DNA of 64,000 bases from Setoptus koraiensis (GCA_048013815.1 CM106586.1:15934001-15998000), one strand, 5' to 3'. Counted from the first letter of the stretch, positions 46,082-56,606 are shown. The notes: generated by a model from the sequence alone, not told the origin. Made by a program: numbers and translations.

Positions 46082-47368
46082 ATGTCAAACGACAAATTAT
46101 CGCCCACACAATACGAGCAGAGCGTGACACCACAGAAAATGCACAACAATGAATCGGCAGCAAATTTGCACTTATACTTGCACAATTCGCAAGATTTGCC
46201 TCAGATGCAAATGCAAACAGTTCACAATTACAACGATTACAACAAGTACGACAGTGATCATCAACAACAACAAGCGAGTTACGAGGACCCTCGCAGTTTC
46301 TACCCCATGACCACATCGGTCATAGCGCCTGACCAAATGAATGAACCGACACAAACACAAGCTACATTGATAACGATGAAATCTAACAACAACAACAACA
46401 GTTATGTAATGGCAAATAGACAAACGGCCGTGTATCACAATCAGGCGATAAATGGCCAACAGTACCAACAGTTAACGCAACAGGCACCACCCTTCTTGTT
46501 GGCATCTGTCCCGACACCGTACGACAGTAGCCATAGCCATTCTTGCCAATGGATGGAGTCCGCACCGCCGGCACAGCCAAACAGACCACAATACAACCGA
46601 GCGGATCGGATATCAGACAGATCAGATAGAATAGATAGACGAGCGATATTGGTGAATGAGGGCCAAAACGAAACGATGATACTGAGTAATGACGAGCAAC
46701 GTCCGCTCGAAGTGCAACCGCCAACGGTAATTATCAAAAAAAGAGTTAAAGCCAACAGAAAGGAGCGCAAGCGGACCCAATCCATCAATCAGGCTTTCTC
46801 AGATTTGCGCAAACACATACCAAACGTGCCTTCTGATACAAAACTATCCAAAATCAAAACTCTCCGACTGGCTATAAGCTATATTGGGCATCTGATGGAA
46901 TCACTGGATCAAGATCAAGGGGACACTGTCACTTCGAGGGGCAGCTCAACTGACAAGCAGCATATATTTATTGGTGATATCGAAGATGGCCAAGACGCTC
47001 CAAAGCAACCCAACGACCGCCAACAGGCTCGAGACGAGCACAGTCGGACGGGCTCAAACGGCTCTGACAACTTTGCCAGCAGTACACCCACTTTGAACTG
47101 GGTGGCCGGCCCCAACAGCCAAGCCCCATCTCATGCAAATACCCCAACAACTGTCAAGAGAAACAAAACTGCCAAGGTTAGGACAGGTTGGCCAGAGATA
47201 GTTTGGTCATTATCCTCCACTAGCAATGCTATGACAAATAACCAAATCAATGCAGCACAAAACAATGCCCTAATTACAGGTAGAGCTATCAATAATTTGG
47301 ACCAGAAACCGGAAACAGTCCACAACAGCACATTGTGCAATGCACGAGCAAATGAATCAAATTTGTAA
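46082..47368 (+). CDS. HAND: Heart and neural crest derivatives-expressed bHLH transcription factor, intronless
   Basis: b[48 protein letters not shown] and the HAND-specific C-terminal motif RTGWPEIVW. Confidence 0.93.
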
Positions 47369-52858: not shown

Positions 52859-54694
52859 ATGCACAACATTGGCGAGGCCATTGTGACAAGGCCCAATCTC
52901 AGTTGGAAACAGTTGGAAATAGATGAAAAGATCAAAGAGATTGTGCTGAAGCAATTCAAATTTGACAAAATGACACCCGTGCAATCGGCAACCATTCCTC
53001 TCATGATGGCCAACAAAGACGTCATTGTTGAGGCTAAGACTGGTAGTGGTAAAACTCTTGCGTTTATTATTCCAATACTGCAAATGATCATGTCCCGTTG
53101 TAAACAAACGACAACTTTGACCACTCACGATGTGCTGGCCGTCATAGTTAGCCCGACTAGAGAGTTGGCCAGGCAGATATTCATTCAATTGAATGTGTTC
53201 ACCAAAAAACCATTGTTGAACAACGAACAACAACCTCACATAAAGACTCAACTTATTGTTGGTGGTTCGGATTCCGGCGTTGATATAAAGAAATATGACA
53301 GATTTGGGGCTAATATCATAGTGGCCACACCAGGCAGGCTGGCTGATCTGTTGGAGCGACCCGATAATCGCTTGGCCGAAAGTATAAGAAAACAACTTGT
53401 TATTTTTATCATGGACGAAGCCGATCAACTATTGACACTTGGCTTCGAGAAAGATCTCTCATCCATATTATCATACCTACCAAAACAAAGGCGGACAGGT
53501 CTTTTTTCTGCAACGCAAACCAAACAACTAGATCAACTCACACGCTCCGGTCTCAGGAATCCCATCAGAGTTAATATGAACAAAGAAGACAACATTAAGA
53601 AGGATGACACAAAAACAATGGTCTCTATGCCGGATAAGTTGGAGAATTTCTATCAAGTTTGCGATACATATGCTCAGAAACTAGTCTTTCTTTTGCAGAT
53701 GCTAGAAAAACAACCCAATTCCAAGATACTTGTATTTATGTCTACATGCGCTCAAGTCGACTATTTCGCCCAGAGTTTGACAGAATTCACGACAACTGTC
53801 AAGCCTGACCAGATCCTCAAGCTGCATAGAAAATTAAAGAACAAGAGGAAAGCTATATTTGATCAATTCAAAAAAAGAAAACATTGCATATTATTAGCCA
53901 CAGACTTATTGAGTCGAGGAATAGATGTACCAGATATTTCTTGGGTCATCCATCTTGATCTACCCGAAAGTCTTGAATCATATGTCCATAGGAGTGGTCG
54001 AAGTGGCCACAAAATTAACATAAGCGGCAATTCATTGCTGCTTCTGGAAAATCATGAGTTGGACTACATAGAAATGTGTAGAAGGAAAGATATAAAATTG
54101 AATAAGCTAAGCGGCAAGCTGACATTCGAAAGCCAATATAAATATACGCAAAATTTATTAGAAAACATGAAGGCTACTGCCAGAAAGGACGCAAAATATT
54201 ATGAATCAGGCATGCAAGCTTTTGTCTCTTACTTGAGATTTTACTCTACAAAATTGTGTCTTAGAAAATTGTTGTATCCCAAACTAGATATAGTGCAATT
54301 GGCCAAAAGTTTTGGTCTATTAAAAGTGCCTAAGATGCCTGAATTGAAGAACAGCTTGCGGCGTATCATGAACGATTTTCAAGCGGATGCAAACGATTTG
54401 AAAATATGTCATGAGCACACTAAATTATTACATCCCGATGGTATAACTAAGAAGAAAAAGCAGCAACATAATGACGCTTCAGACTTGGCCGATGAAGAAA
54501 AATTTGATTCTTGTAGAATTAAGAATGCGAGTAGCAAGGAAAGAGAAAAGTTGAAAAAGTTGAAAGGCAAACGACAAAAGAGAGCTGTCGACGAGTATGA
54601 ATTTGACGAGCTTAGTCGAGACAACAGAATGGTGAAGAAACTGAAGAAAGGAAAGATAAGTGACGCTGAATTTGATGCCTATTTCAATCTGTGA
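52859..54694 (+). CDS. DDX55: DEAD-box RNA helicase DDX55/Spb4, intronless
   Basis: Q motif MTPVQSATIP, AKTGSGKT, SPTRELA, ATPGRL, DEAD, RRTGLFSATQT, FGLLKVPKMPEL and a basic C-terminus. Confidence 0.93.
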   Translation: MHNIGEAIVTRPNLSWKQLEIDEKIKEIVLKQFKFDKMTPVQSATIPLMMANKDVIVEAKTGSGKTLAFIIPILQMIMSRCKQTTTLTTHDVLAVIVSPTRELARQIFIQLNVFTKKPLLNNEQQPHIKTQLIVGGSDSGVDIKKYDRFGANIIVATPGRLADLLERPDNRLAESIRKQLVIFIMDEADQLLTLGFEKDLSSILSYLPKQRRTGLFSATQTKQLDQLTRSGLRNPIRVNMNKEDNIKKDDTKTMVSMPDKLENFYQVCDTYAQKLVFLLQMLEKQPNSKILVFMSTCAQVDYFAQSLTEFTTTVKPDQILKLHRKLKNKRKAIFDQFKKRKHCILLATDLLSRGIDVPDISWVIHLDLPESLESYVHRSGRSGHKINISGNSLLLLENHELDYIEMCRRKDIKLNKLSGKLTFESQYKYTQNLLENMKATARKDAKYYESGMQAFVSYLRFYSTKLCLRKLLYPKLDIVQLAKSFGLLKVPKMPELKNSLRRIMNDFQADANDLKICHEHTKLLHPDGITKKKKQQHNDASDLADEEKFDSCRIKNASSKEREKLKKLKGKRQKRAVDEYEFDELSRDNRMVKKLKKGKISDAEFDAYFNL

Positions 54695-54819
54695 TTTGAG
54701 TAATAATAATTATGATGATAATAATGAGTAATCATTGTTTATTTTACAATATATTGATTAATTTGATGATGCAACAACAGAAATCAACTATATACAGATA
54801 TTCGTTTCGTCTCATTAAC

Positions 54820-55092
54820 TTACTTCTCTGCTTGATAGAAAAAACTCTTGATGTCGTCAATGTATCCATAGGCATCTAGCTTTTGTTCTAGTTTTTGTAT
54901 CTCTTCCAAAGTCAGCCTTAGAATTGACATTCTCGTGGTGCCTTGTTGAGCGTTAGAACAATGTTTCAGTAAGGAATAGCATCTTGCTACACTTTCGCGC
55001 CATCTTGCATCACTGATTCGATGTTTGTTTTTATTGTCCACGAGAAACTCGCACGAAGACGATTGCATCGAGACATCCTCTGACATTTCCAT
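54820..55092 (-). CDS. Small divergent bHLH protein (STRA8-like motifs), 90 aa; possible upstream exon 55412-55369
   Basis: Basic/helix-loop-helix pattern HRISDARWRESVARCYSLLKHC-loop-TRMSILRLTLEEIQKLEQKLD; AATAAA on the minus strand at 54743-54738. Optional exon GA|GTAGGT...CACAG|T (phase 2) would add 23 aa. Confidence 0.7.
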   Translation of the reverse strand: MEMSEDVSMQSSSCEFLVDNKNKHRISDARWRESVARCYSLLKHCSNAQQGTTRMSILRLTLEEIQKLEQKLDAYGYIDDIKSFFYQAEK

Positions 55093-55781
55093 TATTGTGC
55101 TTTTTGCGACCGTACTGTGATTGCTTGCTTGACTTTATTTGTTTAGAAACTTGTTCTAACGAGGTAACTTTGTGACAGTGAGCTCGATGAAAGAAACTGA
55201 TTATATCACTTTCGATTACTATGGTTCAGGTGAGTAAGTTGCCGGTGACAAGTTGTCGAAGTTTTTTGTGGAAGGCGAGCAGAAGACGAAGTTTTGTAAG
55301 CGAGACATAAGTTGCGACTGACAGCAAATCAAGAAACACAATCCGAGTTGATCGACTTTTTTACCTACTCATCTCCATCTTGTATTGGCGATGATGCTGC
55401 ATCGTCGTGCATACTAAAAAAGTCAATTGGGGCAAACGATAGTTTGCACCTAACAGTACAACTAACTACAGACGACGGGCTATCGTTTGTGCATATGGAT
55501 GGCGCAATTTTCTTATGCAATATGTAAAATTAAGCGCTAAAAAATGCGCTTGACTTACTTTGCGCGCGCCTGATTTTTTTTTCTTTTTTTTTTCATTTGC
55601 ATCTTGTTTTTTATTCGGATTGTATAATCCGGATAAATCAACACGAAAGAATCAGCGTACGTGAAGCGCATGCAAATGCAGTGTTAGCTCTGGCAACAGG
55701 TATTCAAGCGGTCGCAAGTCGACGCACATTCGCACTGTGAGCACAAATCATTTGATTTGTTCGCTCCCATCAAAGCACAGA

Positions 55782-55853
55782 AGCAGAGTGGCGCAGTGGA
55801 AGCGTGCTGGGCCCATAACCCAGAGGACCGTGGATCGAAACCACGCTCTGCTA
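55782..55853 (+). tRNA. tRNA-iMet: Initiator tRNA-Met (CAT)
   Basis: 72 nt AGCAGAGTGGCGCAGTGGAAGCGTGCTGGGCCCATAACCCAGAGGACCGTGGATCGAAACCACGCTCTGCTA, with A1:U72, GATCGAAA T-loop and GGG/CCC anticodon stem; T-run Pol III terminator follows. Confidence 0.98.
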
Positions 55854-55988
55854 CTTTTTGCTTTTTGCTAAATGCCATGTGCATCTTTAAAACACAACAT
55901 GTCCTATTATCTTCATTATCCTCATTGTGCCTTTATCTAGTTAATTGACGATTATTGTCCTCTGGATATCATTGTCTTTCGTGAAAAC

Positions 55989-56606
55989 ATGGCCAGCGGA
56001 ACCACTGTCAAAACATTTGCCTCCTTATTGCGTTCGTCACAATTTATCAAGAGGGGAGACTTCAGAAATTCTATTGTCAATGGGACCATATTTCATATTG
56101 TTAACGACGATCTCTATGTTGATATTGGCCTAAAATTTCATGCCGTAGTCAAAAAACCTCAACAAGACAACAGCCTGTATGTCAGAGGAGCAAACGTTAG
56201 AATGAAGCTTTTACGTTACGAAATAACAGATAGATTTCTAGGACAAGAGACTGACACATCCCTGTTGGAGGCTGACGCCGTTCTAATAGGCCTAAACTGG
56301 ACGCCGGTCGGCAGCAAGGTTTCTAAGGCACCCACGAGGGCAACGTCCACACAAACAGTCAAATGGAAGAATAAGCGAGCGCCAATCGAGCCCGAGCAAC
56401 CAAATAATACTGTGCAAAAGCAACCAAACAATACTATGCAAATGCAACCAACCAATACTATGCAAATACAACCAACCAATACTATGCAAATGCAACCAAA
56501 CAATACCATGCAAAAGCAGCCTGAACAGATAGAGAAAGAGGGAACTCCTCGTTCACAAAATATTGAAAAAACTGTAGATGAGACGGTAGAGAAGGAATCA
56601 AAATAA
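55989..56606 (+). CDS. MRPS28: Mitochondrial ribosomal protein S28 (bS1m)
   Basis: TFASLLRSS...GTIFHIVNDDLYVDIGLKFH...YVRGANVRMKL...RFLG..TDTSLLEADAVLIG; 5' end uncertain. Confidence 0.9.
   Translation: MASGTTVKTFASLLRSSQFIKRGDFRNSIVNGTIFHIVNDDLYVDIGLKFHAVVKKPQQDNSLYVRGANVRMKLLRYEITDRFLGQETDTSLLEADAVLIGLNWTPVGSKVSKAPTRATSTQTVKWKNKRAPIEPEQPNNTVQKQPNNTMQMQPTNTMQIQPTNTMQMQPNNTMQKQPEQIEKEGTPRSQNIEKTVDETVEKESK
56397..56516 (+). repeat. Coding 24-bp minisatellite x5 (QP[N/T]NT[M/V]Q[K/M/I]) in the MRPS28 tail
   Basis: Five in-frame CAACCAAxxAATACxxTGCAAAxx units. Confidence 0.9.

What the first reader, a model, noticed from the sequence alone, without database searches (positions are those of the whole stretch)
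54820..55412. Tiny STRA8-like bHLH gene in an arthropod-type genome
Seen: a 90-aa ORF with its own AATAAA and a bHLH fold, but with a non-canonical basic region (H-x3-D-x2-W-R instead of H-x3-E-x2-R-R). From memory of vertebrate STRA8, three segments align: basic region RISDARWR vs RLSQARHR, helix 2 ILRLTLEEIQKLEQKLD vs VLNKAKSHIPELEQTLD, and downstream IDDIKSFF vs LEEVKKEY. STRA8 is a meiotic-entry factor and is not, to my knowledge, part of the standard insect bHLH set. Inference: this is a minimal STRA8-related factor or a new orphan bHLH. Loss of the E-box-reading Glu suggests non-E-box binding or a dominant-negative partner role.
Basis: partly seen in the sequence, partly recalled or inferred. 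Interest (0 to 1): 0.75.

Follow-up and report, generated by a model that had tools for sequence, protein, structure and literature searches.

The report
Mini STRA8-type bHLH gene in mites
A real, strongly conserved 90-residue gene in this probable gall/rust-mite genome encodes little more than a helix-loop-helix DNA-binding domain with an unusual, invariant DNA-contact segment. Its longer relatives in a velvet mite and in molluscs are the closest invertebrate match found here to the domain of STRA8, the vertebrate factor that starts meiosis.

Summary
The 90-aa ORF at 54820..55092(-) is a real gene. It has more than 30 same-sized relatives in mite-like contigs, dN/dS of 0.09 against the closest one, conserved gene neighbours, and a conserved AATAAA. 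AlphaFold plus structure search gives a bHLH fold (top hits all bHLH, Z 6.0-6.7, rmsd 1.3-2 A). The basic region KNKHRISDARWR is invariant, with Asp where bHLH proteins have the E-box Glu, Ala for Arg10 and Trp for Arg12.

The ORF itself hits no Pfam HLH model. However, 14 of 28 family members give sub-threshold hits to Pfam bHLH_STRA8. The family profile also finds two longer proteins with the same SDA[KR]WRxSVxxCY signature: one of 421 aa from the mite Dinothrombium, and an uncharacterised mollusc family. All 26 mollusc members hit bHLH_STRA8, four above Pfam's cut-off, and they carry a C-terminal HMG-box-like domain, the layout of MEIOSIN/STRA8. In a tree these three groups form one clade (100/99), apart from 20 canonical bHLH domains of this genome.

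Verdict: a miniaturised, probably DNA-binding member of an undescribed protostome STRA8-type bHLH family. Kinship to STRA8 is plausible (about 0.6) but indirect. Function and expression are untested. The scan had not noted this before.

The parts
54820..55092 (-). Coding sequence of the 90-aa mini bHLH protein (stop TAA at 54820-54822)
   Evidence: ORF list. 27 relatives of 78-139 aa. dN/dS 0.09 against L002.
54997..55032 (-). Basic region KNKHRISDARWR (residues 21-32). Asp28 replaces the E-box Glu, Ala29 replaces Arg10, and Trp31 replaces Arg12.
   Evidence: Invariant in 28 sequences. Register against 11 canonical bHLH domains of the same genome. Coordinates.
54955..54996 (-). Helix 1 (residues 33-46, ESVARCYSLLKHCS)
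   Evidence: AF2 helix 12-46. S34, V35, C38, Y39, L41, L42 and C45 are invariant.
54934..54954 (-). Loop (residues 47-53)
   Evidence: AF2 model. This is the variable part of alignment A1.
54871..54933 (-). Helix 2 (residues 54-74, RMSILRLTLEEIQKLEQKLDA)
   Evidence: AF2 helix 54-74, pLDDT above 90. Superposes on helix 2 of E47, MyoD and MAX.
54826..54861 (-). Short C-terminal helix (residues 78-89) with the motif [LI]-D/E-x-[VIFL]-K/R-x-x-F
   Evidence: AF2 helix 78-89. F85 is invariant. The corresponding stretch of the Dinothrombium protein aligns with the mollusc post-bHLH extension.
54738..54743 (-). Poly(A) signal AATAAA
   Evidence: Sequence. AAAATAAA is conserved in L002.
55365..55412 (-). 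It is not a coding exon of this gene.
   Evidence: Sequence. Not conserved as an ORF or splice site in L002.
55295..55575 (-). Upstream non-coding region with blocks of 9-23 identical bases shared with the closest relative. Examples: CTGTCAGTCGCAACTT at 55309-55324, CAATTGACTTTTTTAGTATGCA at 55408-55429, TTTTTAGCGCTTAATTTTACATA at 55521-55543, AATCAGGCGCGCGCAAA at 55559-55575. These are candidate promoter and 5'UTR elements.
   Evidence: Pairwise DNA alignment and coordinates. Not found in more distant orthologous loci.

Best explanation
This is a real single-exon gene for a 90-residue transcription-factor-like protein. The protein consists of one basic helix-loop-helix domain plus a short extra helix.

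It is the cut-down mite version of a bHLH family defined by the basic-region/helix-1 signature S-D-A-[KR]-W-R-x-[SN]-V-x-x-[CS]-[YF]. Longer members are a 421-aa protein in the velvet mite Dinothrombium and 440-1100-aa mollusc proteins that add a C-terminal HMG-box-like domain. Among described families, this bHLH most resembles that of vertebrate STRA8.

Inferred mechanism:
- The protein dimerises through helices 1 and 2, either with itself or with another bHLH.
- Its invariant basic region lies in the DNA major groove.
- Because Glu9, Arg10 and Arg12 are replaced by Asp, Ala and Trp, the target is probably not a standard CANNTG E-box.

Shown here: the gene is conserved under purifying selection, has a bHLH fold, has an invariant basic region, forms one family with the Dinothrombium and mollusc proteins, and has Pfam-level affinity to bHLH_STRA8.

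Inferred only: dimerisation, DNA binding, the target site, and any germline or meiotic role.
For: Gene reality:
- 27 relatives at E 1e-19 to 1e-43, all 78-139 aa.
- dN/dS 0.09 (window vs L002) and 0.07 (L030 vs L033).
- Conserved neighbourhood of CSN3/MRP-S35, the bHLH gene, an optional WD40 gene, and the DDX55/SPB4 helicase in L002, L003, L030 and L033.

Fold:
- AF2 pLDDT 80.7.
- Foldseek top hits are MAX, E47, MyoD and MYF5 (prob up to 0.97, TM to target 0.83).
- VIA-align gives Z 6.0-6.7, rmsd 1.3-2.0 A over 54-66 residues; 47 of the top 50 rows are HLH domains.

Family:
- The profile of A1, searched against 1.84 billion proteins, finds outside its own group only Dinothrombium RWS08226.1 and Elysia KAK3762938.1 in an N-terminal bHLH register. 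The other two hits are repeat-rich proteins.
- BLASTP of the window protein vs Dinothrombium: 39% identity over 59 aa, E 2e-9.
- hhalign of mite vs mollusc alignments: 96-97% probability, E 2e-9 to 2e-10.
- The mite HMM scores Dinothrombium at 46.7 bits and molluscs at 31-40 bits, but 20 canonical bHLH domains of the same genome at 11.3 bits or less.
- ML tree: mini-mite + Dinothrombium + mollusc form a clade at 100/99, and mini-mite + Dinothrombium group at 95/82.

STRA8 affinity:
- 14/28 mite proteins hit PF23175 at 13-16 bits in one consistent register.
- 26/26 mollusc proteins hit it at E<0.1; four are over the 25-bit cut-off (25.1-27.3).
- 0 of 10 canonical bHLH controls hit it.
- Mollusc members have an HMG-box-like C-terminal domain: HMGB3 at E 0.0032, and Foldseek SSRP1, SOX30 and BAF57 HMG at prob 0.5-0.63. 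STRA8 and MEIOSIN are both described as bHLH plus HMG(-like) proteins (PMC13637641).
Against: - The window protein itself gives no hit to PF23175 or PF00010, even at E<=10. A six-frame scan of the genome with PF23175 does not pick it up.
- The A1 profile finds no bHLH among PDB sequences.
- The big profile search did not return vertebrate STRA8 at E<=1e-3.
- No STRA8 or MEIOSIN sequence was available, so no tree or profile-profile comparison with them could be made.
- The mollusc profile scores two canonical group-B domains of this genome (L021 at 32.2 bits, L018 at 28.9 bits) as high as it scores the mite proteins. The weakly supported nearest canonical neighbour in the tree is L018 (68/73).
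- Mollusc proteins score about as well on generic HLH (positions 13-53 only) as on bHLH_STRA8.
- No transcript evidence exists: the short contigs examined are genomic.
Confidence: 0.7

Rival explanations
1. It is a diverged member of the SOHLH family, not a STRA8 relative. Bao et al. [quoted passage not shown] STRA8 is not mentioned in that paper, so it was probably not in their data set, and the mollusc SDAKWR genes may be one of their two 'SOHLH' clades.
For: The patchy distribution (molluscs and chelicerates, no insect hit) resembles what I found. The paper reports two SOHLH clades in lophotrochozoans (PMC5381572).
Against: The specialised Pfam model that the proteins hit is bHLH_STRA8. By my recollection, which was not tested here, SOHLH1/2 keep the canonical Glu9 and Arg residues that this family lacks. 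The paper's supplementary gene lists are not held, so any overlap is unverified.
Confidence: 0.15
2. It is an Id/Emc-like passive inhibitor: a small HLH protein that sequesters another bHLH and does not touch DNA.
For: It is very small (90 aa), has no activation or HMG domain, and has lost Glu9, Arg10 and Arg12. The mollusc profile has weak PDB hits to ID1 in helices 1 and 2 (E 0.3).
Against: Id-type proteins lack a basic region. Here twelve consecutive basic-region residues are invariant across 28 sequences and are the best conserved part of the protein. The signature is kept from molluscs to mites. The model extends helix 1 through the basic region as in DNA-bound bHLH structures.
Confidence: 0.1
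3. It is a fast-evolving copy of a standard group-B bHLH (MLX, Mondo or MAX type), and the STRA8 resemblance is convergent.
For: The nearest canonical domain in the tree is L018, a group-B bHLH-Zip I read as MLX-like, at 68/73. The mollusc HMM scores L021 and L018 at 29-32 bits. The Atlas structure search ranks MLX level with STRA8 (TM 0.68 each).
Against: The genome keeps its own canonical group-B genes. The mite HMM gives them 10 bits or less. The clade is separated from all 20 canonical domains at 100/99 on a very long branch. There is no zipper after helix 2. Canonical domains never hit PF23175.
Confidence: 0.05
4. It is a chance ORF or non-coding sequence between the helicase gene and the tRNA gene.
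For: No Pfam hit for the window protein. No transcript data.
Against: dN/dS is 0.09 with dS 0.74. There are more than 30 orthologues with invariant motifs, conserved synteny and a confident fold.
Confidence: 0.01

Closest known systems
Vertebrate STRA8 bHLH domain (Pfam PF23175, bHLH_STRA8)
   Same: N-terminal bHLH with a non-canonical basic region that lacks the E-box Glu. It is the best specialised Pfam model for the family (14/28 mite proteins sub-threshold; 26/26 mollusc relatives, four over the cut-off), matching in full-length register from the basic region to the end of helix 2. The mollusc relatives add an HMG-box-like domain, as is described for STRA8 and MEIOSIN.
   Different: The window protein itself does not reach any reportable score. 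It is 90 aa, whereas the Atlas STRA8 clusters are represented by proteins of about 330-360 aa and hold chordates only. It has no HMG-like region. It has Asp at position 9 where, from my memory, STRA8 has Gln. No expression or retinoic-acid link is known.
MEIOSIN / BHMG1 (bHLH + HMG box, STRA8's partner)
   Same: The mollusc relatives share the layout of an N-terminal bHLH and a C-terminal HMG box (layout of MEIOSIN from PMC13637641).
   Different: The mite protein has no HMG box. The Dinothrombium protein shows none either. No MEIOSIN sequence was available for comparison.
Uncharacterised mollusc 'BHLH domain-containing proteins' (e.g. Lottia LOTGIDRAFT_228205, Crassostrea K1PNY4, Elysia KAK3762938.1) and Dinothrombium RWS08226.1
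   Same: They share the SDA[KR]WRxSVxxCY signature. hhalign gives 96-97%, and they form one clade at 100/99.
   Different: They are 5-12 times longer, with a post-bHLH beta-hairpin/helix extension. The molluscs also have an HMG-like domain, a more canonical loop (Pro after helix 1) and a more canonical helix 2 (KISKALILQE).
Canonical bHLH factors (MAX, MLX, E47, MyoD; Pfam PF00010)
   Same: Same fold: Z 6-6.7, rmsd 1.3-2 A. The hydrophobic positions of helices 1 and 2 are in register.
   Different: Glu9 is Asp, Arg10 is Ala and Arg12 is Trp. There is no Pro at the helix 1/loop border, no zipper and no PF00010 hit.
Id / Emc (HLH without basic region)
   Same: A small protein that is little more than an HLH domain.
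   Different: It has a complete and invariant basic region.

Membership tests
bHLH superfamily | Fold: a basic segment continuous with helix 1, a loop, then helix 2 packing as in solved bHLH domains | tested here: met
   AF2 model with pLDDT 80.7. Foldseek top hits are all bHLH. VIA Z 6.0-6.7, rmsd 1.3-2.0 A over 54-66 residues.
bHLH superfamily | Sequence match to Pfam HLH (PF00010) at or above 20.7 bits | tested here: not met
   No hit for the window protein at E<=10. One of 28 relatives hits at E 0.078. P0031 scores 16 bits and Dinothrombium 17.3 bits. Mollusc relatives pass, but only over profile positions 13-53.
bHLH superfamily | E-box-reading Glu at basic-region position 9, with Arg at positions 10, 12 and 13 | tested here: not met
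   Asp28, Ala29, Trp31 and Arg32 occupy those positions. They are invariant in the family.
STRA8 (Pfam PF23175 bHLH_STRA8) | Score at or above the curated 25-bit cut-off on the STRA8 bHLH model | tested here: not met
   Window protein: no hit. Relatives: 14/28 at 13-16 bits. The homologous mollusc family has four members at 25.1-27.3 bits and the rest at 18-22 bits.
STRA8 (Pfam PF23175 bHLH_STRA8) | Closer to STRA8 than to other bHLH families in a tree or profile comparison that includes STRA8 | not testable with these tools
   No STRA8 sequence could be obtained by any tool. The only proxy is the Pfam model. Ten canonical bHLH controls gave no PF23175 hit.
STRA8 (Pfam PF23175 bHLH_STRA8) | HMG-like domain downstream of the bHLH; germ-cell expression at meiotic entry | tested here: not met
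   The protein ends 16 residues after helix 2. Only 125 nt separate its stop from the convergent helicase stop. Expression is not testable here.
MEIOSIN/BHMG1 | bHLH plus an HMG box in one protein | tested here: not met
   The mite protein has no HMG box. The layout is seen only in the mollusc relatives, and tentatively.
MAX/MLX group-B bHLH-Zip | Canonical H5-E9-R13 basic region and a leucine zipper continuing helix 2 | tested here: not met
   Asp is at position 9. Helix 2 ends at residue 74 and is followed by a break. The mite HMM scores the genome's own group-B domains at 10 bits or less. The tree separates the clade at 100/99.
Id/Emc | HLH without a basic DNA-contact region | tested here: not met
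   A basic region is present and invariant.
SOHLH (sensu Bao et al. 2017) | Groups with human SOHLH1/2 in a bHLH tree; gonad-specific expression | not testable with these tools
   No SOHLH sequences were available and the paper's supplement is not held.

The most novel reading that the evidence does not exclude
Protostomes have an ancient STRA8/MEIOSIN-type bHLH(-HMG) gene family, so this class of meiotic-entry factor predates vertebrates. Gall/rust mites have pared it down to a 90-residue bHLH-only protein that still acts in the germline, binding a non-E-box site. That would make it the smallest natural working module of this class.
Probability: 0.3. Interest if true: 0.8.

Novelty: new variant of a known kind. 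Interest (0 to 1): 0.62.

Why it matters
STRA8 and MEIOSIN are treated as vertebrate inventions. A 2026 Genes & Development paper states that when this axis emerged is open and that species outside vertebrates were not examined (PMC13637641).

The mite gene led to a protostome family with a STRA8-type bHLH, which in molluscs also has an HMG-box-like domain. For this family I found no paper and only 'uncharacterized' database names.

If the kinship holds, three things follow:
- The origin of this factor class moves back to the bilaterian ancestor.
- Tractable invertebrates become available for testing it.
- The mite protein is a natural minimal construct showing which part, the basic region plus HLH, is indispensable.

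Independently of STRA8, an invariant H-x3-D-A-R-W-R basic region is a defined, testable case of altered bHLH DNA recognition.

Tried and rejected
- Pfam, and PDB sequence searches with the single protein and with the family profile, gave no significant bHLH hit.
- The ESM Atlas gave only weak leads: scores of 0.82 or less, with some 'BHLH' or HLH-bearing clusters. For the Lottia bHLH it ranked MLX and STRA8 clusters equally.
- The word search with the Dinothrombium N-terminus returned only the query itself.
- Single-protein six-frame searches of the genome with the Dinothrombium or Lottia protein did not recover the window ORF. They hit canonical bHLH genes weakly. Direct BLASTP showed the window ORF is the better counterpart.
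- The only PF23175 hit in the genome (L004, 17.9 bits) lies in low-complexity ORFs and was dropped as spurious.
- No upstream motif is shared across distant orthologous loci.
- A splice donor overlapping the stop codon (GTAAGT, 54818-54823) was considered. I judged it unimportant because no room exists for a further exon and relatives read through to poly-Q tails in the same frame.
- A search for transcript-like contigs failed: the short contigs are genomic.
- Literature searches for invertebrate STRA8 or MEIOSIN, and for the mollusc gene identifiers, found nothing.

Full report
**What is in the sequence**

- On the minus strand, an ATG ORF of 90 codons runs from 55092 to 54820.
- It lies tail to tail with a 611-aa DEAD-box helicase of the DDX55/SPB4 type (52859..54694, +). 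The two stop codons are 125 nt apart.
- Upstream are a tRNA-Met (55782..55854, +), an MRP-S35 gene and a COP9 subunit-3 gene.
- An AATAAA sits at 54738..54743(-), 77 nt after the stop.
- The genome piece is 48.7 Mb in two contigs. Earlier agents of this scan took it for an eriophyoid (gall/rust) mite. I did not verify that independently, but the nearest named relative of this gene is from the acariform mite Dinothrombium tinctorium.

**Is the ORF a gene?** Yes.

- The word-indexed protein search returned 27 proteins of 78-139 aa at E 1e-19 to 1e-43. They come from Logan, ENA and JGI assemblies, and none has a name or Pfam domain.
- The exhaustive profile search added more.
- In the alignment (A1) the residues K21-N-K-H-R-I-S-D-A-R-W-R32 are all invariant. 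So are S34, V35, C38, Y39, L41, L42, C45, T53, R54, M55, L58, R59, T61, I65, E69 and F85.
- Against the closest relative (L002, 84% protein identity), dN is 0.068 and dS is 0.736, so dN/dS is 0.09. A second pair (L030/L033) gives 0.07. Other pairs are saturated at silent sites.
- The neighbourhood is kept. CSN3 and/or MRP-S35 lie on one side and the SPB4-type helicase on the other, with a WD40 gene between in the more distant lineages.
- All longer 'relatives' (130-169 aa) are upstream over-extensions by a prokaryotic gene caller. The conserved protein starts a few residues before KNKHR.
- I found no transcript evidence. The short contigs I inspected are genomic.

- The proposed first exon (55412-55368) is a 15-codon ORF ending in TAG at 55367-55365. 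The only GT comes after that TAG, so splicing cannot extend the protein.
- In L002 the stretch is an 8-codon ORF with neither the donor nor the acceptor.
- I therefore read the gene as single-exon, at least for its coding part.
- Between the window and L002, several upstream blocks of 9-23 identical bases stand out (55295-55575). They are candidate promoter or 5'UTR elements. They are not shared with more distant loci.

**Fold**

- AlphaFold2 with A1 gives helix 12-46, a loop at 47-53, helix 54-74 and helix 78-89, with mean pLDDT 80.7 and values above 90 from residue 30 on.
- Foldseek against the PDB lists almost only bHLH domains: MAX 1hlo_B at prob 0.96, MYF5 7z5i_A with TM to target 0.83 and rmsd 1.3 A, plus E47, MyoD, TCF4 and MITF. 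E-values are only 0.5-3, as expected for a 60-residue two-helix unit.
- VIA-align on the same list gives Z 6.0-6.7 with rmsd 1.3-2.0 A over 54-66 residues spanning model residues 12-77. Z values in this range are not proof alone for helical proteins.
- The uniformity of the list and the sequence register settle it. Aligned with 11 canonical bHLH domains of the same genome, the hydrophobic positions of both helices line up. The basic region reads H5=H24, E9=D28, R10=A29, position 11=R30, R12=W31 and R13=R32.

**Family**

- The window protein hits neither PF00010 nor any other bHLH model, even at E<=10. The A1 profile finds no bHLH in PDB sequences.
- When every member of A1 is scanned, however, the commonest Pfam hit is PF23175 (bHLH_STRA8). 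It hits 14 of 28 members at 13-16 bits (cut-off 25), always in the same full-length register: profile 18-79 of 80, protein 8-70.
- Ten canonical bHLH domains of this genome (49-75 bits on PF00010) give no PF23175 hit, while hitting other specialised bHLH models.
- The A1 profile, run against 1.84 billion representatives, found 11 proteins at E<=1e-3. Besides its own group these were two repeat-rich proteins and two N-terminal bHLH proteins:
  - Dinothrombium tinctorium RWS08226.1, 421 aa, KHKASDTRWRTNVAKSF.
  - Elysia crispata KAK3762938.1, 747 aa, RRQSDAKWRASVATCY.
- The Elysia N-terminus retrieved 25 more mollusc proteins of 440-1100 aa from gastropods and bivalves, all named uncharacterised or 'BHLH domain-containing'. 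They share RRRQSDAKWRASVAxCY[DE]TLK.
- Links to the mite group:
  - BLASTP of the window protein vs Dinothrombium: 39% over 59 aa, E 2e-9.
  - hhalign of mite vs mollusc: 96-97%, E 2e-9 to 2e-10.
  - The mite HMM scores Dinothrombium at 46.7 bits, molluscs at 31-40 bits, and the 20 canonical domains at 11.3 bits or less.
- An ML tree (79 columns, LG+C20) used 9 mini-mite, 1 Dinothrombium, 9 mollusc and 20 canonical G000 domains. The other 27 PF00010 loci of the genome, the other mite sequences and 17 mollusc sequences were left out. The three groups form one clade at 100/99. Dinothrombium is sister to the mini proteins at 95/82. The nearest canonical domain, a group-B bHLH-Zip I read as MLX-like, attaches only at 68/73.
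- The genome has about 45 ordinary PF00010 loci, and this gene is not one of them.

**Relation to STRA8/MEIOSIN**

- All 26 mollusc proteins hit PF23175 at E<0.1. Four exceed Pfam's cut-off: Lottia 27.3, Saccostrea 27.2 and 26.9, Pinctada 25.1 bits. The match covers the basic region (positions 11/17-77), whereas their PF00010 matches start only at position 13.
- The best PDB sequence hit of the mollusc profile is the HMG box of HMGB3, E 0.0032, at profile positions 486-541. Two members hit Pfam HMG models weakly.
- In an AF2 model of the Lottia protein, a confident three-helix unit (436-492, pLDDT 80-92) draws SSRP1, SOX30, BAF57 and SOX2 HMG boxes in Foldseek at prob 0.35-0.63.
- A bHLH plus an HMG(-like) domain is the layout reported for MEIOSIN and STRA8 (PMC13637641). 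That paper also says STRA8 has been surveyed only in vertebrates and that the time of origin of the axis is open.
- The Atlas STRA8 clusters are 100% chordate.
- From memory only, not tested: human STRA8 reads ...RRLSQARHRATL...LFNNLRK... and later ...SLEEVKKEY.... This parallels [IQ]SDA[RK]WRxSV...CYxxLK and the family's L-[DE]-x-[VIL]-[KR]-x-x-[FY] helix.
- Against the link:
  - No STRA8 sequence came back in the big search.
  - The mollusc profile likes two canonical group-B domains as much as it likes the mite proteins.
  - Bao et al. 2017 described a pre-bilaterian, gonad-specific 'SOHLH' family in molluscs and a spider. STRA8 is not mentioned in that paper, and its family may overlap this one. 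Its gene lists are not available to me.
- I put specific kinship with STRA8/MEIOSIN at about 0.6.

**How it probably works**

- The protein is nearly all bHLH.
- Helices 1 and 2 should form the usual four-helix dimer. The partner, whether itself or one of the roughly 45 other bHLH proteins, is unknown.
- The basic region is the most conserved part and is kept from molluscs to mites. This argues for specific contacts, most simply with DNA, and against an Id-like passive role.
- Asp in place of Glu9, together with Ala10 and Trp12, predicts a site other than the classical E-box.
- The Dinothrombium protein shares the post-bHLH extension with molluscs but shows no HMG box. The HMG part was therefore probably lost before the mite protein shrank to about 90 residues.
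- Other agents noted several miniaturised proteins in this genome.
- A germline or meiotic role is only an inference from the STRA8 resemblance.

**Verdict**

- This is a new, minimal variant of a bHLH factor, belonging to an undescribed protostome family whose best described counterpart is the STRA8 bHLH.

Noticed in passing
proteins P0036, P0038-P0062 (molluscs); model m3283845e9e1f: This is an uncharacterised mollusc family with an N-terminal STRA8-type bHLH (RRRQSDAKWRASVAxCY), a structured post-bHLH hairpin/helix, and a C-terminal HMG-box-like domain, i.e. a MEIOSIN/BHMG1-like layout. No paper was found. It may overlap the 'SOHLH' clade of Bao et al. 2017.
   Followed up: partly
window 46082..47368 (+), HLH at 46739-46894: A canonical 428-aa bHLH gene lies 8 kb from the mini gene. 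It is the strongest PF00010 match in the whole genome (74.5 bits in the six-frame genome scan, 70.3 bits for the full protein).
   Followed up: no
window 55782..55854 (+): A tRNA-Met (CAT) gene sits between the mini bHLH gene's upstream region and the MRP-S35 gene (ARAGORN and Rfam agree).
   Followed up: yes
window 55989..56606 (+): The MRP-S35 (mitoribosomal) gene has a C-terminal half that is a run of QP[NT]NTMQ[MIK] repeats not covered by the Pfam domain.
   Followed up: no
window 55295-55575 (-): Several blocks of 9-23 bases are identical to the closest relative (L002) upstream of the gene, although silent sites have diverged to dS 0.74. They include GC-rich palindromic pieces (GGCGCGCGC, TAGCGCTTAA) and TCAGT initiator-like sites. 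They are not conserved in more distant loci.
   Followed up: partly
window 54818-54823 (-): The stop codon TAA lies inside a perfect splice-donor hexamer, GTAAGT. L002 has GTAGTA at the same spot. With only 125 nt to the convergent helicase stop there is no room for a further coding exon.
   Followed up: partly
L003, L030, L033 vs window and L002: In the more distant mite contigs a WD40 (THOC3/PROPPIN-like) gene lies between the mini bHLH gene and the SPB4-type helicase. In the window and its closest relative that gene is absent from this spot and the helicase is convergent with the bHLH gene.
   Followed up: no
L004 (G000:C1:9654465-9654584): This is the only six-frame hit of PF23175 in the genome (17.9 bits). 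It falls in short low-complexity ORFs and looks spurious.
   Followed up: yes
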